From Ophelia neglecta (taxonomy: Eukaryota): DNA of 64,000 nucleotides. Both the position numbers and the translations under genes were made by a program. Below are positions 1,369-23,921 of this stretch, piece after piece. Within the stretch, counting starts at the first letter, position 1. Every line of letters starts with the position of its first letter. The DNA lies in contig OZ260665.1 of the NCBI GenBank assembly GCA_965285935.1, forward strand, positions 20,646,001-20,710,000, in the 5' to 3' direction. The notes under the pieces are model-generated. The model ran no database searches. It had not been told where the DNA came from and worked only from the letters and a program-made list of their open reading frames with translations.

Positions 1369-3719
1369 TTGCCCACAGCGAGGTGTATGGCTATGGGTTC
1401 AGACCGTACGAGTATCTGCCGGCTCCGGAAAGTAATAGCACACACATTCCCGACCTTCAGAGGGCGGCACTTGGAATGTACGGCTTGAGGAGTTTCCTGC
1501 TGCCCCGGATGTTCATGGTCCTATTCTACGTCAAAGAGCAGCTAGGTCTTCAAACCAACCCTTTTCTGGTAGGTTAGAGAAATATAATGAAGGTCATTAG
1601 CGACAAAGAATATATATCAAATAGAAGAGCGCTTCAGCTACCAAACTTCTTAACCCCCTGCCAATCCTTATGTTTGAGTCGTTTCATGTTGGAAAGTAAT
1701 CGTATGTTTGCTTTGCAGCTAGCGAGAATATTCCATGCCATGATTGCAGCCAATTTGCCTTTTGCTGTCTTTTATTTTTTGCGACACACAGTCAAGTCAC
1801 GTGACACACGATTCTTGGCGTCCATTTTGGTGGCCACATCAGAACATCTGACTGTACTAGGCACACACACACTGGTAAACAGTTTCCTGGCTCCTTTTGT
1901 ATTCTTCTTTTTGGGCTGGTTCTTAGAATTGACCTCTTCAAACCAGAACCCAATCAGGGAGGAAGAAGATGCCATTTTAAACGTCACTTATTCATCGACC
2001 GGTGCTTTACTAAAACCTTATAATTGCTTGAATGTCAACGAGAAGCAGAACTCTTTCACTAAACATGCCAACATTGACCCGAAAGTGATCCGAAATGGGG
2101 CAGCAAAAGGAAAAGGGTGTACAAGCAACAACAACAACAACAAAAATAACAAGATGTGCTACATCACAAATTGTCAGGAAAATGCTACTGTGGCCGTATT
2201 TTGGAATTTTAGTAAATATTCTAAGCAAATCGCTTCGTGCTTGATCGGATTTAACGTAGAAATAATAATACACACATTCAAGTCAATGTCAGATATGGTG
2301 CCCATTTCCATTAGAATAGTAGTTGGAATATCATTAGGTATTCTGGTTTATATCAGAGTTGATTTAATACTTTTAGTTGGTTCGGTGATTGTTGTTTTTT
2401 ATGTATTTAATAATTTGTCAAATATGGAATATTTAGCCCCCAACTTGCCCCAGTTTGCTTTAGGGGGATGTATTGGTATAGTCCTGGGAGGCTGGGATGA
2501 CTACACGTGCTATGGTGTTTGGTTTATATCCCCTTATCAATGGTTTAGATTTAATGTTTACCGCGACTTATCTACCACCATCTTTGGTAAAGGAGAATCA
2601 TCTTACTATGTCCAAGAGTTATTTATACGAGATGGATATTCAATCATCCTGTGTCTAGGTGTCCTAATTGCAATTATAACATCTACCGCTATGGTTAGGT
2701 TTGGCTCCCATTCCTCAGTGACAAATACACCATTATTTCGTTTTACGCTGGTTTTTGTTTGCTTGTTAGCTTTCTATTCGGCTAAAGGACACAAGGAGCT
2801 TCGGTTTGTACACAACGTGATTGTGATATACCTTGTAATCAGCGCATTATCTTTTGACCTTCTGATTGATCTCTTATGCAACTTGCTTAATAGGACGACT
2901 GTTAGAAAACTTGCATATGCGTTGACTGTTTTTTCGGCTTTCTGGCATCTCTTTCTCCGATGTGGAACACTAAAGGATAAGAATGTTGCTAGATGGTCGT
3001 ATCAAGGCACAACAGATAGTGGTCACGTGAACAGCTGCTTGGATTTCATTGGCCAGCAGGATGACGTCACCGGTATTTTCCTGGATAAAACCATCCACAT
3101 GACTGGAGGATACAGCGTGTTACACAAGGACGTTCCCATATTGGCTTTAATTCATTATGAATATTACGAATTTGGAAAAAGCGCCAGACAATCCACTTAT
3201 TCCAAATTTGGAAATCAGGATGGAAAAGAAATACATGTCTCAGTTCTATCGCATATATCCGACTTTTTCTCGGTAGATAACAGCCTGTTACTGGTTAAAC
3301 ATATTATCGATAATAAAGTATACAACTATGTTGTGATTGAAGCTGACAGACCCATTCTTGATAATGGATTCCGAAAAGTGTTTTCAACCGGACGTCTACA
3401 AGTTATGAGAAGACACGGGGATGGCCAGTCAGAAATTAGTCTTAAAACTCCTTCAGACCAAATTCCAATCGGTTCAAACTCTACCGTTTTGGAATTCGAA
3501 GGCAGTTGGTTATTAACTTTTGGATTGTACCATAAAGCATTATCGAGACTACATGAGGCTTTGAGACTGGACCGAGATCGAGTAAAGTTGTACCAGCTTC
3601 TCTCTACGACATATGGTGCTCTGGGAGACATGAAAGCTGCCAAAAAACAATTCTCACAATGTAAACAGTTACATGGACAGAAATGTTCTCAGCCTCAACC
3701 TAAAATTGTGCTGCACTGA
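1369..3719 (+). CDS. PIG-B/Alg9-like (Glyco_transf_22, GT-C fold) mannosyltransferase with C-terminal TPR; 5'-partial; exons 1369-1568 and 1719-3719
   Basis: Acceptor tttcag|1369 gives (V)AHSEVYGYGFRPYEY..GLRSFLLP (cf. PIG-B EVAH..VFGYG..TWEW..LRS). Donor ctg|gtaggt at 1569 and acceptor ttgcag|1719 join in phase 0 into LARIFHA. Further GT22-like motifs: THTLVNS, YIRVD, DDYTCYGVWFISPYQWFRFNV, YSAKGHKELRF. Many TM segments. TPR-like helices at ~3480-3670. The upstream exon with the DExxQ motif was not found in the window. Confidence 0.85.
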
Positions 3720-11800: not shown

Positions 11801-12726
11801 GTTCTAAGATCCGTTAAGGACTGATCCTTATTTTTGATATTTGATAACCCAATATGAACAAAGGAGACAATGAACTGTTATCAGTTGACACAAATTCCAC
11901 CGGTAAATGTTTCTAACTAGCTAAATTAATAAACATTTCCATCAGATTTAATTGAGCAAACCATAGTAATTTTAGGCTATGCAAAACCTTTAACATAATG
12001 TTCCTGTAGCGGCCATTAATTAACTATTTTTAATGCTGCTTCTTAACTTGCTCACATACAAAAAGAATTAATTTGAGCATATATTCATACTAATGGCACA
12101 AACACATAACGAGATGAAATGGGTTGACTACTGACCCATATAACCAAACGTCTAGGAATATGTGTTTACGTTTACATTTCAAGGGTGAATTGTGACAATG
12201 AACAAATCACCGTTATATTTCAAAACCGAAGTGTTACGCCAAGCACAAAACTCAAGAATGTTTTACTTAGAAATAAGGGTTTAGAAAATATAAATTAGGG
12301 CCGCATGTTTCCATAAATCATGTCTGAACTAGACCGTCTAGTCAATGGCTGAATCGGCCTACATTCATCAATGTGTCACGCGTAATGCTCCAAGGTGTCG
12401 CAAGTTTGGCAAAACCGAGTAGATGTTACCTGCATTTTTTTCTTTTAGTATGTAGAGTGGGAACTGCATTTTAAAATGATTATTTTTGACATACGTACTT
12501 TGAACAAGTTACTGCATTTCAAAAGGCGGAGCGGACTGTTGCGGACTTCTGGTTGGCATTCGGTTGGATCAGTTTTCTTTAATTTGTTTATAATGTGGAG
12601 ATAAACCAATATAGTCAGCGGGTAATGTAACAAACAAACATCACTCCCAGTTCTTACACAGTACACAAGCATCTCTATTATATACACATAGCTATATGGC
12701 ATAGACTTTCGGATTTAGCCTTAATG

Positions 12727-12909
12727 CAGTTAATCATATGAATTAAGACCACCCAGGTACTGGTACTGGAAACTACTGGTATGATTATGGAGGTGGTCTG
12801 TTTAGACAGGTTATTTAACATTGAAAGAATGCAGAAGGGTCTTCAAATGAGTGGTCTTAATTTCCAGGTGGTCTGAATATAATGGTGGTCTTTAAGGAAG
12901 GTTTCACTG
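12727..12909. mobile_element. Tc1/mariner(pogo)-type MITE, copy 1
   Basis: Runs cagttaatcatatgaattaagaccac...gtggtctttaaggaaggtttcactg. Colinear with the copy at 58030-58205 (shared ttatggaggtggtctgtttag.caggttattt.acattga). CAGT..ACTG termini. Confidence 0.75.
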
Positions 12910-15055
12910 AATATCTAGTCGTTTGTAGTAGGCCCTCTTTCGTCGTGAAGCAATGCTCGATTTATATCTAATAAATAACATTGTGTATGGCTATATTTAA
13001 GAGTTCAAATACCATTAGACCATATACAAATTTTCAAATATGGTAATATTCAAGGAGGGTTGGTTCGGACGTTCCTCTTTTGTGTAACGAGCATGTTAAG
13101 GTAGAAGCTCACTCATAAATTTAAACAGCTATATTCTATTTGTACTTTCCCTTGTTAGCCTATTGTATAAAAGAAAACAATAGGGGGAAAAATAAGGTTC
13201 TCCAGCCTTTCTAAAGAGATTAATTTTTAATGTGCATATAGTATGAAATATGCACACTCTGGCACTTGACTTATACATGCAAAAGATATGGATTAAATCA
13301 AATATTCACTTTTCTTGAATTATAATACGGTCCTCTTTCTACAAAATAAAACAATTATATACAAAACCAACCACACTCTCTGTTCGTCCTGTTTTACTTC
13401 GCAGTCATGGTGGCCATATTTACCAAATCACCATGTGTCATTAACTTTTACCACACAGAACAGTAAAAAAGGCCTCTGGGACAATCTATTTGCTGTGTGA
13501 CACGATAAGCATGGGATCTAAAATGAAATGTGAGATAACTGTCAAAGCATTAGGCCTGAAGATTGTTCTTTATGTCTTCATATAATCAGATAACGACTCA
13601 TTTTAGCTTTATTGATGCCAACTCGCACTGTGTTTATATGCATAGTTCACATACAATTTACCATATCGTCAATGAATACATATTCAAGGATATAGTAAAA
13701 ATCGTGTAAAGGGAAGAGGCATTATACCAAATTACAGGCGTAAACAAACTGATCCTACCGATACTACAGCTAACTTTAATGGTACAACTGATAGTAGATA
13801 CAAATATGCTATAAAAGCAGAAAAACAATTTTACTGATGGGCTAAAGAATGTGCAACAATACAATAGTCTACAGTAAAAACAAATTCCTTTAAATCTAGG
13901 GGCGATAACATAAGGTGTCTTTCCGCTTAATGTCGGTTTTTAAGGCTTAATATATCTAGTCATTGTGCACCATTGGCTGGCAACCACGTGCTGATTTTCA
14001 TTAACCAGTGTATTGCTTGCACGTTTCTCCTTAATTAACCAGGACAAAAAATCTAGCATCTCGATCAATAATAACTAGTTTGTATTGTTTATCCGCAATT
14101 ATTTATATGGTCTTGTCTTTATTGGTAAGATGTGTCATATATTTGGTCAGCAACTTCTTTCTGGCAATGAGCATTTACCGATAATTAAGTACTACAAGTG
14201 CAGTCATTGATCGCGATGTAAGCATAATTAAGCCAAATCACATCCAACGAGAGAAAGTGCCATGACTTGACGTACGTAATAAAAGTTTTAAACACTAAAT
14301 AAAGCTTCATTAAAAACAATGAGAAAAATGAATCATAAATCCCCGAATTTCATTTATTATCTTTCTGCTAAGTGAAGCGCGGAGTTTCTTATTAAAATAA
14401 GTAATGCTCCGCTGTTTGTAAACTATCCGTAATTACTTAGAATAAGCTTCTCTCATAGCAAAGAGTCGCCTCATTCTGATATAACCCTAGTAGTATATAG
14501 CTTGCCAAAACGGCTCTGGATATAATAGGTTATCCCATCCTCTGTCTCTTATTTTTCGGTATTTATTGATCTAAGGTATTGATTTCGGGTGATATTTTTT
14601 ATCGAAATGACTTAATATTGCTATACACGAGGGGAACCAGCTATCAATGCAAGCCAGAATACCTAAGAAACTGAGATTGGGTAAATCTAGGACTTGATGG
14701 CTTATCTTTACTTTACGTTAAGTTGTTACTTTAAGTTATGGAGCTGACGATTGGTATTTGCAGCTAACGGGTCCTGGTGAAATCAGACCGATTTCACGGT
14801 TAACTGCTACCATTGCTAATTCAATTGTCTGTCGTGGTAGCTTTTATTCCGTCCGTTGTTTAAACAATACTAAAACAAAGACATTTCCTAGGAAGTTAGG
14901 CTCACTTCACACTTCGAATTATATTTTTTCATGATTTGTGGCCCATGAACACGTTAGACACTGTCCTTTTTATCAAAGAATTCATTTCTTCTGTGTTACA
15001 AAAGGAGTTAGGAATATGAAATACCAATATTACCCTGTTTAAAATACCGTTTGGT

Positions 15056-15184: not shown

Positions 15185-15545
15185 GGACGACATTGGTTAT
15201 ATTTATGTGCTTTATAATATGCGATAATTGTAAATCTATCGCAAACGTTTTTTGGAACTAATTAGGGCCTTTCTTTCAATTTGTAATTTAACATAAAATA
15301 GTAATTATTTTATTTATATCCAAAATTGTTCTTATGGTCAAGCAACTTTCACCTTAACAAACGTAGGATACTGAGCTGCTTTTTTAAAATTATTTTATCA
15401 TAATATTCAGATAACGTATATCATCACAGAGAGTGAAACGCAAATAAACCTGAGACTTTAAACAACACTATTTATTTGCGTCATTTTACTTACATCCAGT
15501 ACATTAGAAGTTAATTTTACACGTATATAGATGTGTCATACGTCG

Positions 15546-15597
15546 ATATATAAATATATATATATATGTGTGTGTTTGTGTGTTGTGTGTTTGTGTG
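15546..15597. repeat. Compound (AT)n(GT)n microsatellite
   Basis: atatataaatatatatatatatgtgtgtgtttgtgtgttgtgtgtttgtgtg. Confidence 0.8.
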
Positions 15598-15795
15598 CAA
15601 ATCGGAACACTATTAGTGTGTCGTGATGTAAAATACCATAATAATTGTAAATGTGATACAAACATTGATATTTCACATGACTAATTAAAATATATTCTAT
15701 AGATATATTTCTTTATATAAGTCAACTATAGACGAAGTTATTTTAATAGTCAAAGAACCCAAAATATGCAATAAGTGAAATACATACACTTCAGT

Positions 15796-18700
15796 CTAGA
15801 ACGTTTGACCGAGAAGTACGCGGGCGCGGTCAATAAATGACGTAATTTTCTTTATAAAGCCAGACGATGAGATTGTTGTTGTTAAAGGGTTAACAAAGGC
15901 ATTCAAACTAAACATGATTACCATTGACAGCGTTATGTACTGAGTATTGAACAAGGGGTCTACGTATAATATTATCGTTATCACTATCGGGATGGTAGCG
16001 CCTAAACAATTAGCAATACTATAACATATTGATCGCCGAATGCCGGACAACATGCGGCGCTTTCTGCCAACATCTGTAACCTTTATCAAATTCAGTGAAC
16101 ATATTAGGCATTTTATATATCTTAATTGCAAACCGAGATTGATTAGTGTGAGGATAATATTGTATCCCAAAAATATGCTTATGAACAAAACCTTATCATC
16201 AAGTTGTATGCGATTAACGGGTAGGCAAAAAGGATTCGAAGCCGTCTCAAATTCCCCGAGTCGTATTACAGTAAAAGTTAGAAATATGCACAGGCATGTG
16301 TTGGCGAACAAGGACAAACATGTAATTTTCATCATTTTACCAGTGCGTAACTTTATATCATTCGAAGCAATCATCAGTTGTTGAATAGCAAGTGTCAAAG
16401 ATAAGTGAAGGGATGACTCATAACAGAGGAATACTAATGCACCAATCACAGTACAAGTTACTGAACCAACTAGTGTATATAAATTTGTGGTATGTACATG
16501 ATGTGTAATAATTAGATAACATAGGTATATACCGATTAACAAATCACATACCTGCTGCACCTGAACAGTAACTTTTCTTGAAAGAGCCAAATTACTTTGT
16601 TGCCACCAAACCTCAGAGGTCAAATTAAAGATGAGAATGAATACAGCCAAGAACGAAACAAGTATCAGCATCAGTGGTCCAGGAAACAATCCCTTACACA
16701 ATGGAAATAAATACCTACTACCTTCCAATACACAGTGCGTCATTTTGCGATGTAAGCAACACCACCACCAATCAGTATTCGTCCTAAAGACTAACACGTC
16801 GGTCGAATCTCCAAAGATAAGCAAAGCTGGGTCAAAGAAAGGTGCAAACTCGACATTTAGTTTTTCCAAGGACACCAAATCAACAAATAAATGCGAAGAT
16901 GCGTGGGTCAGCTGTGTGTTACGTAAATTCAGAAAGTGTAGACATTGCATCCCGCTAAAAGCGCTTTTTTCTATAAAAAACAATGGGTTGCTGGATAAAT
17001 CAAGTTCAATCAATGAATTGAGACCTACGAACATTGTATGGGTTAGTTGCCGTAAATCATTGTGATGCAAAAGAACATATAACAAGTTTTTGCAAGTTCG
17101 AAAGAAGAAGTTCGGTAATACAGCAATATCAGTATGTGTAAGTACAAATTTTCTCAGTTTTTTCTTTCCATCAAGCAGCGCCAGTGAAACACTTTTCAAA
17201 CGATAGTCTGATTGATTTTCATATATTAAATATTTTTCATCTGTATTATAGCCTATCAGGGTGAGTCCAAGAGGGATAACTGTCGTGTCTCCGTGACAAA
17301 CATATCCATCCGGACATGGCTTTTCCCAAGGTTTGGATTCATCATCGCAAGAGAATGGACATTCACATATGCCGTTCATTATCTGATCGGGATGGACACA
17401 GCGTTTTCCACGGAAACACATAAAGAGTCCAGGACATGCAAGACGTTCACAGTTTATCTCGTCCTTACCATCGGGACAATCCCGTATGCCATCACAAACC
17501 ATTTCGTAGGGAACACAATAGGTGTGGGGGCATTTAAACGATTTGAGACACAGTATTTCTTCACAATATTTCAGACTACTTGCAGCATAGCCACTCAGTT
17601 TGCATTCACCATTTGTGTGTTTTTTATCACCCTGAATTCTGTAAAATAGGCACGCCGCAGAAACTATTTCTCTGTTGCATGAATCATCGACAGGAGAATT
17701 ATTCCCAAAATATTCGAGGTCTGTGGGTTGATTATTCAGTATAGGCAGGCTTGTGGGACACTCTGTGTCAGAGTTCCTGGCTTTGAAACAATGTAGTTCG
17801 TCAGAATGATCAGCACAGTCCGATTTCCGATCACACAGGAACGACCCGGGAATACAGCCCCCATCATCACACTGGAAATAGACCTTTGAACAAACGCATC
17901 CGGGTTGTTTACATGATGTGTAGCAATATTCGGGGGATACCGGGATTTCCGTTGAATGGCATATATTATCACACTGTATTTCGTCACTCTCGTCTGGACA
18001 GTTTGATAAGCCGTCACATCTGTATTTATCCCAAATACATGTTCCATCCGAGCATGTGAACATCCCTAATACACATGTCTTGTCAACGTGGACTGGCGCA
18101 GATTCGCAAGCGACATGTGTCGGGAATTGAAGTCCTTTTACGTCGCAGACGCATTTTTCGCTGATAACAGCGATATCTTCACCACAGCTGCAGTCTTGAA
18201 TATAAACACTACCATTATCCATATAAATACGGTCCGTCTCCCTGGACAAAAGATGTAAAAATGCGTTGAAAGTAGAGGTCCCCCTGGCATGGTTATTCGC
18301 AACTTCAGCTTTGCCCAGACATGACCTCTGCCATGGATGAACACTGAAACATATTTCGTTTATCATAACTGATCTATTAAAGCAGTCTATATTGTTTTTC
18401 TGTAGATATTTAGATACTTGCATACCGGTGGAATTATTATTTACGTATTTAAAACGTTCACAAATGTATCCAATTGACATAGGGTCGTTTTCGACCTGAC
18501 AACTGACTTTGAACCACGGGTTCCACTTAAAATGTCCCATTAGGACTGCAGTGCAATTGTGGTCGTTTCCGGACTCATATCCTTCTGCCAGATGATGTGG
18601 GTAACGTATATGACGTATTCTAGTTCTCCCCGTCGTGTAATTGCAGGGCATCAGCAAGGACGAGTAACTCGTGCAGATACTCTTGTTATGTTTCAGGATT

Positions 18701-21700
18701 TCTGATTTTGTCGGATGAGACGAATGCCAGTTGGAGTACTGGTATGGCGAGTTGTCCGTCCACCCGTGTTTGCCATCCTGTAGTTTAAAAACAACACACT
18801 TAGATTGACCTATATCATTAAGTTGTTAAACTTATACGTTTGCATCACCCAATCCATGCCATGCTCTTTCCAGCTTGTACAGCAATTTCATCAAAATTAT
18901 CTGTTCATATGTCAAAACGGGGGTAGCTTTTTCCATATACTCGATAACAAGTAACGATTGTTTCAAGAAATGATATAAATGCAAATAAAACTATAAAATT
19001 AAACTAATACAAACACAAGCAATATGCGGACGTTTCATCGCTATCAGATATAGGATAAATTGACCTTAATAGGCATGTGAGTTAACACAGGCATTTATGG
19101 AGATCAGACCATTATTTATTGACCTTAGTTGGCAGGCGACCTTATTACACAGGTGACCACAAACACAGGTTTTACTGTATATCATTTGCTGTAGTTGCCC
19201 GTGTTCAGTCACTATAAAAGAGTAACTGGTTCACTTAAGCTAAGCACTGTTATAAAGTACAATCCTAGAGATTTTATTCTATTTTTCTCTTTACGACTCA
19301 AACATTCCTCTTTGCTCTTTTGTTTATTGGGATTCTTTCGTTCCTATAGTCTTTAAATATTAGCAGGAAGCTAACACCATCATAGCCTCTCTTGGGACAT
19401 CATCTCTGTCCTACTTTAACCCCTGACAATTTTGTTTTCGTGATCTGATCGCATTATGGATAACTGTTGACTACTCCTTATTACAAGTAAAAACTTTTAT
19501 TATGGAATGCTTTGTGTTGTAACATGCTTAGTTATTGTTTGGGAGCTGGATAAATTTATATAATAAAAAAATAATAAATTAATTTCACTGCTTGCCACTA
19601 ACATTAATACCGAACAAAAACCACCCTTCCCAAAGAAAATGAATTCTCAACATACCGAATTCAGATCATGAAGGCCGATCCACAACATGCCGACAGTGAA
19701 AAAGTTTTCAACCACCTGCAGAAAGGGGTCCCGAACGTTAAACGTCCATTTATTCAACACGTATGCATGTGAACTGTGGGGTGCGTCGTGAAACATTTCC
19801 ATCATTCTATACCTCCATGTCAGTATCACCCTCCATTCCCAGTCCGAGTTTATACTTAGCAGATGACCTCCCTCCTGCTTACAGTTATTCTCTGCCTGCT
19901 GCCAGGATGGCGATTCGCCATCAGACATATATACAGAATAAACCTTGTCACCATGGCACATAGTATTTATCTTGTTTTTACATAGGATTTCTAGCCCGTG
20001 CATATCGGGTTTTTCCTCCATTTTATGGGACAATATCAACTCGTGTTCATTATCTCCTGAATCTTGCCCTATTATTGTGACCACCGCTGGCGTGTAAATG
20101 TCCTGAGCGTGCACCGTTATCAACCCAATGTCGGAGGGCACATATTGGTAGGTTAACTCACGCAGGCTTCCTTGAGAAGTGTACAGACGCTCTTCGATCT
20201 GCGCTCTGTTCATCGAGATATACACATCAGCGTCGTTCGCTATTAAGTTATTCGTGTTTGAAATTTTACGTTTCACCATCCAGTTTAGTGGATAAGATAC
20301 TACTACTATTGGAAACATTCCATCGTAAGTGGCGTTTCTGCTTTTAGGTCTAATTCTTATTTCCAGTATCCAGATCATTGATTTGGTTTTGTGGGGCCAT
20401 ATTTGAGAGAAATCATAGGTGGCATGAATGATGCCGGGGAACTTGCTTAATGGAATTATATAAACACCACATGTGTTTTCATTGAGAAGTCGTGCGCACA
20501 AAGGACTCCACCATCCGCGGCAAGTAGACTTTGCCAAATATTCAGTTATTATTGAACCGATGGAGTCACTAGCCAGTAATGGGATAACAGCACCAGTAAG
20601 GAAGATACCCAAACAAGGTGTGGTATTATTAAAGGTAACTAGCCCGGTATATGCATAATACCTTTGGGCAAGGCAAGGCAAAGCTTCACTGGCTTTAGTG
20701 TAGTAAGCTTGCAGAACCACCTGTATCATGTTTAAGGAATGATAATTTTGAAAGAGGAATTTTTGCGGATTAAGCAAAACAAACGGCCATATCTTACTGA
20801 ATAGTATTGGCTGTGATGTGAACACATCAAAACACCTCTCATCAATTGGAGTATGGTGCTTAAAAAACCACGAGCTCGTTATTGTTGCTGGCCATGTCCT
20901 GATAGACAGTTGGGCTTTCAGCTGAGTAGTATCTTGATTTGTCAAGTTGCTGGTCGAGCTAATTTTAAAGAGAATACTCGACCCACTAATCTTTTCACGT
21001 TGCTCTACATTCTGGTGCATGGATGGTCTGTCACTTGGCATACCTTGTAAGAAAATACAATTATCGTTATCAGATATGTTATACTCCGCCTTAATGGCGT
21101 TTCTAGCCGCTACTCCGTACTCCACATTTAACACCCCTCGACAACTGCCCGGACTAATTATACCTGATATTCTTATATTAAAACCACTGGAGTAACGTTG
21201 AATAACTAAACGGGTCAGCTTCCCGTACCGCAGCCTCCCGATGCCTTCCGATATATATGTCTTTAACATATTAAAGCCTCCTGCAGAACAATAGACAGCA
21301 ACAGGTCTAAGACGATCTCCTTCCCGGTGGTTTACGTCATGGACTATCTCATAAAAGGCCTCTTCGTACTCGGCAAACAAGTACAAGGCGCCAGAGTCAC
21401 ACATGTAGGTCATGTCATTTTCTATTGTCATATTCTCTATGTCAAGAATAAGTTCCAAATTATGATTTGATTCCACTGTAAGACTGTAAAAGACTTTTGA
21501 TGGTAATGTTCTAGTATCGATATCGAAATGTACCTTTTCCTCTGGCGAATGAAGATATGTCGAATCGATTTGACAACTTCCGGTATCGTACATTTCGTCT
21601 CGACAATTAATATCTTGCATTTTCAATATTATTTCTACGATAACAGAAGGTTTTTGTCCCTGTCTTGGTTCATTTTGCAACAAAATATTGGATTTGGAAG

Positions 21701-22895
21701 TGTAGAATATTTGCCCGTAGCCAAATTTGGTCCAGCGTGTAGTCAGAACTCCTTCTTGTGTGTAGTTATATATACTTTGCTTCATGTCGCCACAACTATA
21801 TAAAGAAGCCTCATTGCCCCTATGGTTCTTGTGAGGCGTGCTAGTAATTAAATACGTCAGCATTGTATCCGGGAGCTCGTAAACGGTAATAAATGTGTTC
21901 TGATCACACACTCCATCAGTCACAGTATATCCGATCCTATCTGTGACCAATGCCCTGACATGCCACCATATAGTAAACGTATCATCAAACGTCCACTGGT
22001 ACATAACATAACAGAATACAAACCTTAACACCTCGTATCTCATCAAAGGTTGTAATTGTTCAAAAAGACTATGAACAAGTCCTACAGGTAAGTCACTGTA
22101 CATATTTTCTGTGATGGGCAGTATAAGACCCGTGTCGATCACAGAGTAAGACATTTCAAGGGAAAAGTTGTCCATGCGAAACAAGGTGGCCACTGCCGTC
22201 AAACCACCATCGCTGACAAAATGAAGATGTTTAACATTACCACAAATGTTAATTATTCTTTTGGTCTTTATGCGTGTAAGTAGGTTTTCGTTCTTTTCTG
22301 GCTGAAATGCCTCGAAGGAACCTCTAAGACACGGTACACTATAGTATAACGAACGCATTTCGATCAATGTAAAATTAATAGCATGTTGCAATTTATACTC
22401 AATTAAATAGAAAATACGCGTGAATAGTAAATCGGATTCAACAAAATCAGTCAGATCGTGTTGTGTAATTCTAACCGAGTCGCACAACCTTCGTCTTGAA
22501 TATCGCACACTGTAATACCCACGTTCCCATTTGTAACGAGATCGAAAATCATCACAAAGCGAGGGTCGGACGGACTTCCTCAACTTCTGAAGATAATATA
22601 ACATGCTATTGAGATGGCCGGAGGCAGAAATTTTATTCATATCATACCAGCATCTTCTCCGTAGACCACTGAACCACGATTTAGGCCATTCCCCTCCTGC
22701 TGTAACTGGTATAGCTAGAGGTTCGATTGATATTAGCTTTGATAAAGCTTCAGTGGCTTGCTTGTTATACTCTGATTCATTCCTTTTACTTGATACGCTA
22801 CCGAGATTCATCTCATTATGCATGATGATCCCACTCCTACTACAGCTCATTACCCTGAATGCAACCAATAATAGAGTTATCTTAAGCAACGACAT
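15796..22895 (-). CDS. Giant GRL101/LGR-like receptor (~2073 aa): signal peptide, long N-terminal region (degenerate CUB-like), C-type lectin, LDLa repeats, LRRs, divergent 7TM; exons 22895-19656 and 18777-15796
   Basis: Donor TCG|GTATGT at 19655 and acceptor actacag|18777 are both phase 0 and join WIGLHDLNS to DGKHGWTDNSPYQYSNW, rebuilding a C-type lectin (SWQQAENNCKQEGGHLLSINSDWE..WIGL..W.D.S..Y.NW..CTAV..W..VSC..YICE). Three clear LDLa repeats (e.g. FTCSDGTCIWDKYRCDGLSNCPDESDE) plus one degenerate. About 5 LRRs (LIELDLSSNPL), a WWWCCL hinge, and seven hydrophobic helices ending NAFVNPL. Confidence 0.88.
19050..19177. mobile_element. Partial Tc1/mariner-type MITE (right end) in the receptor intron
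   Basis: Repeated cagg(t/c)gacc motifs ending cacaggttttactg|ta, the same terminal pattern as the 12727 and 58030 MITEs. Left end not seen. Confidence 0.5.
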
Positions 22896-22943: not shown

Positions 22944-22986
22944 AAAATGAACAAGCTCCTACCCAAGTATCTTTTATATATAAAAG
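22944..22986 (-). promoter_or_regulatory. Candidate TATA + initiator core promoter of the giant receptor gene
   Basis: On the minus strand TATAAAAG starts at 22978 (within the palindrome cttttatatataaaag). An Inr-like TCATTT has its A at 22948, exactly 30 nt downstream. The ATG at 22895 is 53 nt further on. Confidence 0.55.
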
Positions 22987-23921
22987 GCCATTCTTGACGA
23001 CATATGGAAAGTTGGAGATTCGGCAGAATAAAAACCTGATTATGGGCTGACATTACTATTAGATTGCCTCAAGTGTGAGGTTTTTCAAATTTACTGTTAT
23101 TGTTATTGTTTAAAAAATTTTAATCAAGCCCTCAAGTTGCATAATGCTTTTAGTCCCTTACACGTGGTCGGTTATTACTTTATAATATTTCACCAAGAAG
23201 ATTTGTAGCTTTTTAAGACTCTTACCCTACTGTTTTTGAGTAATATACTCGGGTGTGTGTTGAGTGACAAAAATATACACTTTACTTGATTACATTCTTC
23301 TTTCTAAATAACATTTGACAATTCAGTACCACTACGGCTAATAATATCTAATTTCACGCTAGAAGGACAATAATCATAAATCTAAAGCTATAACGAACAA
23401 GACAAATTCATCGCCGAAAAAAGTATGGTTGTTACCCAAATGTTAAACATGATAAAATGTCGTCGTTTTGTCTAACGCTACTCTGGCAATTCATCACTCT
23501 ATATCTTTTTACTTATGAATTAGACTTTTTTAACTAGTTTTTTCAAGGGAAGGAGGTTGCAAATAGCCAGTATTGTCATTTTTATTAGGATGAATAATTT
23601 TCCTTGAATAACAAATACATCCGACAGAAATAACGAGAGTATATGTACTATAATATTTATGTTCTGCGCACACCTTAGAGCAAACAAAAGCCAACTACAA
23701 TATTATATATAACTACAAATAGGCGGTATTATTCGGCAAAATGCTTGTGAATCTTACTGGAGTTGCGCATTGCCGCTGCGGGCAGCGATTCCTGAACATA
23801 CTTGAATGCGATTGGCTACAACCCGTAAAATAATTAAAAGCTTCTTCCAGTTTGTACATTGTTTTCAATGTTATTATGCAACTTTGTAACAAAATGCAAT
23901 ATCCACAGCGTTAACATAAAT

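What the first reader, a model, noticed from the sequence alone, without database searches (positions are those of the whole stretch)
15796..22895. Two large ORFs are one ~2070-aa lectin-LDLa-LRR-7TM receptor with a ~950-aa uncharacterised N-terminus
Seen: an 878-nt phase-0 GT-AG intron (19655-18778) cuts through a C-type lectin domain, so the 1082-aa and 953-aa ORFs form one polypeptide. Known: snail GRL101 is LDLa+LRR+7TM and relaxin-type LGRs have one LDLa; neither carries a C-type lectin or a kilo-residue N-terminus. Inference: a pattern-recognition or chemosensory-type giant GPCR that stacks several ligand-binding modules. Encoding it in two ~3-kb exons is unusual for LDLa/LRR genes, which are normally exon-rich, and may point to retroposition. 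This is the best candidate for an undescribed system in the window.
Basis: partly seen in the sequence, partly recalled or inferred. Interest (0 to 1): 0.85.

Follow-up and report, generated by a model that had tools for sequence, protein, structure and literature searches.

The report
Giant two-exon GRL101-like receptor family
The two long reading frames are one gene for a 2,073-residue surface receptor: a known GRL101-like lectin/LDLa/LRR seven-helix receptor with a new 965-residue front end, and one of about 50 copies in this invertebrate genome.

Summary
The minus-strand frames 22895-19656 and 18777-15799 are joined by an 878-nt, phase-0 GT-AG intron (19655-18778) that splits a C-type lectin-like domain. 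The same split occurs at the same codon in all 16 paralogues for which I held both exons. It also occurs in two contigs from other organisms.

- **C-terminal half:** it is a GRL101-like (type C) leucine-rich-repeat GPCR. The lectin + LDLa + LRR + 7TM architecture is already published for Biomphalaria (PMC12297450), so it is not undescribed.
- **What is new:** the ~965-residue N-terminal module. Among 1.84 billion representative proteins it has one full-length relative and one fragment. It folds as CUB-like beta-sandwiches.
- **Atypical helix bundle:** the DRY arginine, the TM6 tryptophan and the NPxxY tyrosine are all missing.
- **Family size:** 66 helix-bundle matches, about 49 of them full length, mostly in tandem arrays on contig C5.
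- **Retroposition is not supported.** The window copy lies in a segmental DNA duplicate of at least 19 kb that includes the intron.
- **Selection:** dN/dS is 0.43-0.62, so both exons are under constraint, with patches above 1 in the N-terminal module.

No RNA data could be found. Ligand and signalling are inferred. Another first-stage note in this scan (s1-734101) describes a similar gene elsewhere in this genome.

The parts
22893..22895 (-). Start codon ATG. It is the first ATG of the open frame, which opens only a few codons upstream.
   Evidence: open frame 1084 aa for a 1080-aa match. The N-terminus MSLLKITLLLVAFRVMSCS is hydrophobic like a signal peptide, and a hydrophobic N-terminus is kept in all subfamilies. 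The signal peptide is read by eye, not predicted by a tool.
19656..22895 (-). [quoted passage not shown]
   Evidence: dN/dS is 0.57 (subfamily A) and 0.62 (subfamily B).
22122..22523 (-). CUB-like beta-sandwich 1 (aa 125-258).
   Evidence: VIA-align Z 13.1, rmsd 2.5 A, 115 of 119 residues of the TSG-6 CUB domain (2wno_A). More than 20 further CUB domains score Z >= 10. Model pLDDT here is only about 55-75. Pfam CUB gives no hit.
21126..21608 (-). CUB-like beta-sandwich 2 (aa ~430-590), the best-modelled part of exon 1.
   Evidence: Most 10-residue blocks have pLDDT 74-86, with a dip near aa 510-530. Two-domain alignments to neuropilin a1a2, cubilin, MAP-1, MASP-1/3 and enteropeptidase reach aa ~585. 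The Foldseek top hits are multi-CUB proteins.
20016..20480 (-). Third beta-sandwich (aa ~806-960); fold class uncertain.
   Evidence: only Z ~6-7, to GOLD domains and to complement C3/C5 and CD109 chains. pLDDT is 50-75. Inconclusive.
19656..20000 (-). C-type lectin-like domain, N-half (aa ~966-1080), ending in the WIGL strand.
18778..19655 (-). Intron: 878 nt, GT...AG, phase 0. It holds a very high-copy short repeat at ~19073-19269.
   Evidence: for the sequence. for the conserved position in paralogues. for other organisms. for the repeat depth.
15799..18777 (-). Exon 2, 993 codons: lectin-like C-half, linker, LDLa modules, LRRs, hinge and 7TM. The stop codon TAG is at 15796-15798.
   Evidence: dN/dS is 0.43 in both subfamilies.
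18454..18777 (-). C-type lectin-like domain, C-half (exon-2 aa 1-108), with a long-loop insertion whose length I estimate by eye at about 55 residues. It reads SHP and WNP where sugar-binding CTLDs have EPN/QPD and WND.
   Evidence: Conserved W6, W17, C75-T-A, W88, C93 and C106. Weak but position-correct CTLD hits. Motif reading by eye.
17971..18075 (-). LDLa module 1 (exon-2 aa 235-269).
   Evidence: Pfam Ldl_recept_a: 74.8 bits, 3 stretches. Conserved Cys and acidic residues.
17788..17892 (-). LDLa module 2 (exon-2 aa 296-330).
   Evidence: best stretch 296-330.
17296..17550 (-). LDLa module 3 (aa 410-443) plus a degenerate fourth Cys-rich LDLa-like unit (aa 448-494). This is the most constrained segment.
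   Evidence: dN/dS is 0.07 (subfamily A) and 0.25 (subfamily B) for aa 406-500.
16768..17220 (-). Short leucine-rich-repeat block (aa ~520-670), followed by the hinge with WWWCC...C...C.
   Evidence: Pfam LRR_8 at 57-65 bits. PDB phmmer hits LGR4/LGR5 LRRs at 1e-18. pLDDT is 64-87.
15802..16677 (-). Seven-helix bundle plus helix 8 (aa 701-992). N1.50, P6.50 and NP7.50 are invariant; D2.50 is kept in most members (Asn in one). There is no Arg at the DRY position (QQL), no Trp6.48 and no Tyr7.53 (NPxxT).
   Evidence: AlphaFold helices 701-727, 732-759, 763-804, 812-840, 859-897, 903-939, 945-969 and 972-992 at pLDDT ~70-90. Foldseek hits LGR4 at 1.9e-14 over ~490 columns, and class A receptors at TMt 0.66-0.77. 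hhalign to the canonical 7tm_1 of P0003 gives probability 87%, E 4e-6 over 283 columns. Pfam 7tm_1 gives no hit. Motifs.

Best explanation
One protein-coding gene of two exons encodes a 2,073-residue type I-oriented surface receptor.

Domain order from the N-terminus:
- signal peptide;
- a lineage-restricted module of about 965 residues, built at least partly of CUB-like beta-sandwiches;
- a C-type lectin-like domain without the usual sugar and calcium motifs;
- three LDLa modules plus a degenerate fourth;
- a short LRR block and a Cys-rich hinge;
- a divergent LGR-type seven-helix bundle.

It is a GRL101-like (type C) LGR. It is one young, dispersed member of a birth-and-death family of about 50 copies in this lophotrochozoan genome. 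The best named matches of a neighbouring gene are nemertean.

Most likely mechanism (inferred): the fast-evolving N-terminal CUB-like and lectin-like modules bind varied external ligands, whether microbial, prey or conspecific. The strongly conserved LDLa-LRR-hinge unit then relays binding to the helix bundle, as the LDLa module does in relaxin receptors.

The DRY arginine, Trp6.48 and Tyr7.53 are absent in every member examined. Output is therefore more likely non-canonical (arrestin-like, co-receptor or endocytic) than classical G-protein activation.

Shown: the gene model, the domains, the family and the selective constraint. Inferred: expression, ligand and signalling.
For: Gene model.

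Conserved splice position: all 16 paralogues held with both exons (intron 86-3111 nt) and contigs L021 and L022 from other organisms. The same pair of large ORFs also sits next to P0003.

Domains:
- Pfam.
- CTLD halves.
- LGR fold: (LGR4 1.9e-14, TSHR, FSHR, C. elegans LGR). One search aligns RXFP1 across the LRRs into the 7TM. One search gives hhalign to a canonical 7tm_1 relative. In one search the nearest Atlas clusters are 'GRL101-like' and 'relaxin receptor 2'.
- CUB-like modules: with a weak feature lead.

Orphan N-terminus: one search found one full-length relative (P0008) and one fragment (P0009) among 1.84e9 representatives. One search found nothing.

Family.

Constraint: one search gives dN/dS of 0.43-0.62 overall, 0.07-0.25 for LDLa3, and 1.41 and 1.21 for exon-1 aa 201-300 and 801-900.

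DNA-level duplication.

Published relatives with CTL-LDL-LRR-7TM: PMC12297450.
Against: - No RNA evidence. No RNA run holds the locus, and the three holder runs are DNA contigs that cover the intron.
- Pfam 7tm_1 does not recognise the helix bundle. A profile of it finds only one weak class A match in the PDB (E 0.003).
- Both AlphaFold models have low mean confidence (pLDDT 56.9 and 50.8). The CUB assignment rests on model islands at pLDDT 55-86, has no Pfam CUB hit, and shows no internal sequence repeat.
- Among the youngest copies, exon and intron or flank identities are similar (94% against 89-94%). Constraint on this particular copy is therefore not separately shown.
- The dN/dS values are pooled pairwise estimates, not a site test.
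Confidence: 0.7

Rival explanations
1. The receptor couples to heterotrimeric G proteins in the classical way, like RXFP1/2 and as assumed for GRL101, despite the altered motifs.
For: The overall LGR fold, with helix 8 and a conserved Phe. N1.50, P6.50 and NP7.50 are invariant and D2.50 is kept in most members. The bundle is under purifying selection, with dN/dS 0.42-0.51. The relative P0003 has canonical DRW and NPYLY.
Against: No Arg or Lys at or next to position 3.50 in any of the 9 aligned members (invariant Q). Trp6.48 and Tyr7.53 are also lost. From general knowledge of class A receptors, loss of R3.50 usually abolishes G-protein activation.
Confidence: 0.3
2. The window copy is a young, non-expressed duplicate, a pseudogene in waiting, even though the family as a whole is functional.
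For: It is a dispersed copy on contig C8, away from the main C5 array, inside a segmental duplicate. Exon identity to paralogues (94%) is about the same as intron and flank identity (89-94%). Several sister copies carry stop codons. No RNA data are available.
Against: Both frames are intact over 2,073 codons with intact GT/AG sites. A TATA-like box lies upstream and AATAAA/ATTAAA signals lie downstream. Subfamily A, which includes this copy, has dN/dS of 0.57 and 0.43.
Confidence: 0.15
3. Two separate genes: a secreted CUB-like protein from the first frame and an N-terminally shorter receptor from the second.
For: Automatic ORF callers list them separately in other organisms. The published Biomphalaria relatives are receptors of about 1,100-1,200 aa, without the extra module.
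Against: Each product would carry half of a lectin-like domain. The second frame has no signal peptide and no ATG near its start (one search gives a TTG at 18657). The two frames are always adjacent, collinear and joined by GT/AG at the same codon in all 16 paralogues held with both exons and in two other organisms.
Confidence: 0.03

Closest known systems
Biomphalaria 'GRL101-like' GPCRs of the SudRes2 schistosome-resistance region (PMC12297450)
   Same: C-type lectin-like + LDLa + LRR + seven-helix order. Tandem clusters of paralogues with presence/absence and truncation variation. Very few introns. Proposed recognition role.
   Different: Those are 1,059-1,229 aa, listed with gene length equal to 3 x protein length, with no ~965-aa N-terminal module. 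There are 12 in the cluster against about 50 here. Their InterPro hits include the rhodopsin-type GPCR entries, whereas Pfam 7tm_1 misses this family.
Lymnaea stagnalis GRL101 and type C2 LGRs
   Same: LDLa modules followed by LRRs and an LGR-type helix bundle. Orphan status. The nearest Atlas clusters are named GRL101-like.
   Different: As described in PMC12297450 and PMC11863921, GRL101 has LDLa and LRR modules but no lectin-like or CUB-like modules. This family has fewer LDLa and LRR units and lacks DRY and the NPxxY tyrosine.
Relaxin receptors RXFP1/RXFP2 (type C1 LGRs)
   Same: LDLa + LRR + 7TM. phmmer aligns RXFP1 (7tmw_R) from the LRRs through the bundle. The LDLa-as-relay idea is borrowed from them (PMC11863921 cites the LDLa requirement).
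   Different: One LDLa, a peptide-hormone ligand, canonical motifs, many introns, single-copy genes.
Multi-CUB recognition and endocytic proteins (neuropilins, cubilin, Neto, and the PLA2R/DEC-205/mannose-receptor CTLD family)
   Same: The predicted CUB-like sandwiches match neuropilin and cubilin CUBs. The lectin-like N-half is closest to the PLA2R, DEC-205 and MRC2 domains. Combinations of CUB and LDLa are typical of such ligand-capture receptors.
   Different: None of those ends in a seven-helix bundle. There is no sequence-level CUB signature here.

Membership tests
LGR, type C (GRL101/relaxin-receptor type) | Leucine-rich-repeat ectodomain directly N-terminal to the helix bundle. | tested here: met
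   Pfam LRR_8 at 57-65 bits. LGR4/LGR5 LRRs are among the top PDB hits. Foldseek aligns the LRRs plus bundle to LGR4 over ~490 columns at E 1.9e-14.
LGR, type C (GRL101/relaxin-receptor type) | One or more LDLa modules N-terminal to the LRRs. | tested here: met
   Pfam Ldl_recept_a at 74.8 bits, 3 stretches. Found in 11 of 11 aligned relatives.
LGR, type C (GRL101/relaxin-receptor type) | Rhodopsin-class seven-helix domain. | tested here: inconclusive
   Fold: seven helices plus helix 8 are predicted, with matches to LGR4, TSHR and class A receptors. hhalign to a canonical 7tm_1 relative gives probability 87%, E 4e-6. Against this, Pfam 7tm_1 gives no hit, and the profile finds only E 0.003 in the PDB.
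LGR, type C (GRL101/relaxin-receptor type) | Class A activation motifs E/DRY, CWxP and NPxxY. | tested here: not met
   QQL at the DRY position, no Trp6.48, and NPxxT instead of NPxxY in all 9 aligned members. Only N1.50, P6.50 and NP7.50 are invariant; D2.50 is kept in most members.
LGR, type C (GRL101/relaxin-receptor type) | Phylogenetic placement inside the C2 clade. | not tested
Only feature-based neighbours are named GRL101-like.
Biomphalaria CTL-bearing GRL101-like receptors | CTL, then LDL, then LRR, then 7TM. | tested here: met
   compared with PMC12297450.
Biomphalaria CTL-bearing GRL101-like receptors | Protein of about 1,100-1,200 aa from a single open frame, with the lectin domain at the N-terminus. 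| tested here: not met
   2,073 aa from two exons, with about 965 residues in front of the lectin-like domain.
C-type lectin-like domain | CTLD sequence profile with the WIGL strand and the conserved Cys/Trp framework. | tested here: met
   N-half: Pfam at 22.5 bits against a 22.6 cut-off on the sub-piece, found in 12 of 12 members; PDB profile E 4e-13. C-half: framework residues are conserved, with weak but position-correct hits. The whole domain could not be scored because the exons were not joined.
C-type lectin-like domain | Calcium and sugar-binding motifs EPN/QPD and WND. | tested here: not met
   By reading: SHP... and WNP at the corresponding places, plus a long-loop insertion. It is lectin-like, but not shown to be a lectin.
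CUB domain | CUB beta-sandwich fold. | tested here: met
   aa 125-258: Z 13.1, rmsd 2.5 A over 115 residues to TSG-6 CUB, with more than 20 CUB domains at Z >= 10. A second unit reaches aa ~585. Multi-CUB proteins top Foldseek and the Atlas shape search. Caveat: model pLDDT is 55-86.
CUB domain | CUB sequence signature (Pfam PF00431). | tested here: not met
   No CUB hit at E <= 1 in any of 12 members. There is only a 'faint' CUB on the upstream ORF next to P0003.

The most novel reading that the evidence does not exclude
These about 50 genes form a previously undescribed class of giant, diversified recognition receptors. An orphan CUB-like array and a non-sugar lectin-like domain were grafted onto a GRL101-type LDLa-LRR stalk. 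The seven-helix bundle has given up the class A activation switches and signals or internalises by another route. The family would serve as an immune or chemosensory repertoire in a poorly sampled lophotrochozoan lineage.
Probability: 0.3. Interest if true: 0.7.

Novelty: new variant of a known kind. Interest (0 to 1): 0.55.

Why it matters
GRL101-type receptors have been orphans since 1994. They have lately been linked, without any mechanism, to schistosome resistance in snails (PMC12297450) and to tentacle chemosensation (PMC13403566).

This genome offers a natural experiment. The same LDLa-LRR-7TM core carries a much larger ectodomain that evolves faster in patches. It has multiplied to about 50 copies in arrays. 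The helix bundle has lost the residues needed for classical G-protein activation, yet it remains under constraint.

If the family is expressed, it could show what the conserved LDLa-LRR core actually does. It could also show whether such receptors act as recognition repertoires, and how a class A bundle works without DRY and NPxxY.

It also flags a practical annotation problem. ORF-based and automatic annotation split these genes in two.

Tried and rejected
- **RNA support:** the run search found no RNA run. The three holder runs are DNA contigs that cover the intron, so they say nothing about splicing.
- **Profile search with the exon-1 alignment in the 5.8-billion-protein index:** nothing found, not even P0008. 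The blank is uninformative.
- **Pfam on the N-terminal 965 aa:** no real hits in 12 members. The WCOB hit on the helix bundle (17.9-19.7 bits, below cut-off) is treated as spurious.
- **Internal repeats:** hhalign between six blocks of exon 1 gave no similarity, with probability at most 0.5%. CUB-like status therefore rests on predicted fold alone.
- **Retroposition:** rejected.
- **Organism name:** no paper in the library cites GCA_029979725, so the organisms remain unnamed.
- **Joined two-exon protein:** The lectin-like domain was therefore only tested in halves.
Full report
**Observation**

One search lists two minus-strand ORFs. One is 19647..22895 (1082 aa, starting at an ATG) and the other is 15796..18657 (953 aa). 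The second frame is open further upstream, to at least 18780.

The sequence shows the junction.
- Exon 1 ends ...GMLWIGLHDLNS (TCG at 19658-19656), followed by GTATGT at 19655.
- The polypyrimidine-poor but valid acceptor ...aaactacAG ends at 18778.
- Exon 2 begins GAT at 18777 (DGKHGWTDNSPYQYSNW).

The intron is 878 nt, GT-AG and phase 0. The product is 1080 + 993 = 2,073 residues. Every test below was done exon by exon.

**Is the junction real?**

No RNA evidence could be obtained. The run search found no RNA run. The three holder runs are DNA contigs that cover the intron. The case therefore rests on comparison, and the comparison is strong.

The window's own genome (G000, 762 Mb; the window is C8:20646001-20710000) holds many copies of both exons. 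I held both exons for 16 paralogues, whose protein identity to the window copy ranges from about 93% down to about 27-36%. In every one:
- a frame of 1068-1145 codons ends WIGLxxxxx (one codon longer in the C2 genes), followed by GT;
- an AG acceptor is followed by xxxxxW(T/V)DxS(P/A/T)(Y/F)xYSxW;
- a frame of 984-1005 codons follows;
- the intron is 86 to 3111 nt long.

The same split, also phase 0, is seen in contigs from two other organisms.
- L022...MLWIGLEGLNQ|gttaga...tttcag|DTEPQWTDSSPYSYSNW.
- L021, from GCA_029979725.1...FYIGLGDK|gtaagc...tttttag|KWSDDVF.

A third organism has an 867-aa ORF about 290 nt upstream of a 961-aa LDLa-LRR-7tm_1 ORF.

**The split domain is a C-type lectin-like domain**

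- Exon 1 carries the Pfam Lectin_C N-terminal part (22.5 bits against a cut-off of 22.6 on the sub-piece). It is present in 12 of 12 members.
- A profile of the exon-1 ends hits the N-halves of solved CTLDs: PLA2R at 4e-13, then DEC-205 and MRC2.
- The profile of the exon-2 starts gives only weak hits (E 0.004-0.7). However, 13 of 15 are CTLDs aligned at chain positions ~69-110 of ~120-143-residue domains, or the matching place in multi-CTLD chains. That is exactly where the domain should resume.
- The framework residues (W, C-T-A, W, C, C-E) are conserved.
- By reading, the EPN/QPD and WND sugar and calcium motifs are replaced (SHP, WNP) and the long loop carries an insertion. It is lectin-like, but not shown to be a lectin.

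**The C-terminal half**

Exon 2 has three LDLa modules (74.8 bits) plus a degenerate fourth, and a short LRR block (57-65 bits).

AlphaFold, run with an 11-sequence alignment, gives low overall confidence (pLDDT 56.9). The LRRs and seven helices plus helix 8 are at about 70-90.

Evidence that this is an LGR-type receptor:
- Foldseek aligns the LRRs plus bundle to LGR4 (E 1.9e-14, ~490 columns), TSHR, FSHR, LHCGR and the C. elegans LGR. It aligns the bundle alone to class A receptors at TMt 0.66-0.77.
- phmmer aligns RXFP1 from the LRRs through the bundle.
- The nearest Atlas clusters are named GRL101-like and relaxin receptor 2.

However, Pfam 7tm_1 does not see the bundle. A profile of the bundle finds only one weak class A match in the PDB. 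Homology to a canonical relative, P0003 (which has DRW and NPYLY), is supported by hhalign at probability 87%, E 4e-6 over 283 columns.

In all nine aligned members the DRY position reads QQL or similar, with no Arg. TM6 keeps Pro but not Trp. TM7 reads NPxxT.

**The N-terminal ~965 residues**

An exhaustive phmmer search over 1.84 billion representatives found one full-length relative (P0008, 30% identity, from run ERR14113986) and one fragment. The other nine hits match only the lectin part. Pfam finds nothing in this region.

The AlphaFold model is poor overall (pLDDT 50.8) and is mostly beta. Fold matches:
- VIA-align places aa 125-258 on the TSG-6 CUB domain (Z 13.1, rmsd 2.5 A, 115 of 119 residues), with more than 20 other CUB domains at Z >= 10.
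- Two-CUB proteins align as far as aa ~585.
- aa 806-960 reaches only Z ~7.
- Foldseek and the Atlas shape search are both topped by multi-CUB proteins.
- The feature search gave weak CUB leads.

No internal sequence repeats are detectable. I therefore call these modules CUB-like by predicted fold. I regard two of them as reasonably supported and a third as uncertain.

**The family**

The 7TM query found 66 matches, with all 73 first-look candidates scored. About 49 matches are full length, and about 39 lie in uninterrupted frames of about 1000 codons (my count).

| Subfamily | Members and location | Identity to the window copy (exon-1 / 7TM search) |
|---|---|---|
| A | The window copy, one at C8:12.23 Mb, and about 12 in a tandem array of ~25-kb period at C5:109.29-110.07 Mb | 90-92% / 92-94% |
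| B | 25 or more copies at C5:97-101, 107, 87 and 113.6 Mb and at C8:17.3 Mb | 45-48% |
| More distant | C8:12.37, C5:20.79, C5:7.59 and C2:11.58-11.90 Mb | about 27-31% / 29-38% |

Several copies carry stop codons or are fragments, which is the pattern expected of birth-and-death evolution.

Pooled Nei-Gojobori estimates:

| Region | Subfamily A | Subfamily B |
|---|---|---|
| Exon 1 overall | 0.57 | 0.62 |
| Exon 2 overall | 0.43 | 0.43 |
| LDLa3 / Cys-rich unit | 0.07 | 0.25 |
| 7TM bundle | 0.51 | 0.42 |
| Exon 1 aa 201-300 | 1.41 | - |
| Exon 1 aa 801-900 | 1.21 | - |

These are rough pooled values, not site tests. They do show that both exons are constrained coding sequence.

**Origin of the window copy**

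blastn shows 89-94% identity to paralogues through the exons, the intron and the flanks. Genome searches with the flanks extend the duplicate from window ~12,021 to at least 31,000.

This is a segmental DNA duplication of an array unit. It is not retroposition. The low intron count is a family trait, because the Biomphalaria relatives are listed with gene length equal to three times protein length.

**Organism**

The neighbouring GT22-type ORF (window 1587-3716) finds its best named matches in the nemerteans Lineus longissimus and Tubulanus polymorphus (34-35%), ahead of molluscs at about 30%. I take the genome to be a poorly sampled lophotrochozoan, possibly a nemertean. This is an inference.

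**Comparison with what is known**

PMC12297450 describes 12 tandem 'GRL101-like' genes with CTL + LDL + LRR + 7TM in the SudRes2 resistance region of Biomphalaria sudanica. The proteins are 1,059-1,229 aa with 7 predicted TM helices. The authors propose that the lectin domain presents pathogen ligands to the bundle.

PMC11863921 classes GRL101-type receptors as LGR type C2 and stresses the LDLa module as the type C hallmark. PMC13403566 reports tentacle-specific GRL101-like expression and speculates on chemosensation. No paper in the searchable library combines LGR, CUB, C-type lectin and LDLa.

The core architecture is therefore known. What differs here is:
- the orphan CUB-like N-terminal module that doubles the protein;
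- the conserved intron inside the lectin-like domain;
- the loss of the DRY, CWxP-Trp and NPxxY-Tyr switches;
- the size of the expansion.

**Mechanism (inferred)**

The variable outer modules capture ligands. The highly constrained LDLa-LRR-hinge unit relays binding to the bundle, by analogy with the LDLa-dependent activation of relaxin receptors.

The absence of R3.50 makes classical G-protein activation doubtful. Arrestin-like, co-receptor or endocytic output is at least as likely. The lectin-like half is closest to endocytic receptors (PLA2R, DEC-205, MRC2), which fits that idea but does not prove it.

**Verdict**

The finding is a new variant of a known kind. Interest is moderate to fairly high, limited by the absence of expression data and of any functional test.

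Noticed in passing
window 19073-19269 (inside the intron): A very high-copy short repeat. Summed word depth is about 1e5 in DNA contigs of three runs, against about 100-450 for most of the rest of the stretch. Many contigs end or rearrange here.
   Followed up: no
window ~12721-12918: A dispersed repeat of about 190 bp, with dozens of copies at 85-88% identity on at least eight contigs, and tandem copies at C8:20631123-20631709. It looks like a SINE or MITE.
   Followed up: no
window ~12021 to at least 31000: The receptor gene sits in a segmental duplicate of at least 19 kb. It copies the ~25-kb unit of the C5:109.29-110.08 Mb tandem array at 85-92% identity. Older partial copies of the flank (64-78%) lie at C8:20.61-20.63 Mb, just outside the window.
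   Followed up: partly
window 22976-22987 and 15474-15479 / 15744-15749: A TATA-like TATATATAAAAG lies 80-90 nt upstream of the ATG. AATAAA and ATTAAA lie downstream of the stop. These are consensus matches only.
   Followed up: no
window ~15553-15600: A (CA)n/(TA)n microsatellite in the 3' flank of the gene.
   Followed up: no
L021 (GCA_029979725.1), L022/L023 (run ERR14113986), and the contig of P0003 (ERZ25072999): Other organisms carry the same pair of large ORFs. L021 and L022 also show the intron inside the lectin-like domain. ORF callers list the two halves as separate proteins. Of the three exon-2-type relatives P0001-P0003, only P0003 keeps a Pfam-recognisable 7tm_1 with DRW and NPYLY.
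   Followed up: partly
window 1587-3716 (+): An intronless 710-aa GT22-type (PF03901) mannosyltransferase-like ORF. Its best named relatives are nemertean proteins at 34-35% identity. It was used here only to guess the taxon.
   Followed up: partly
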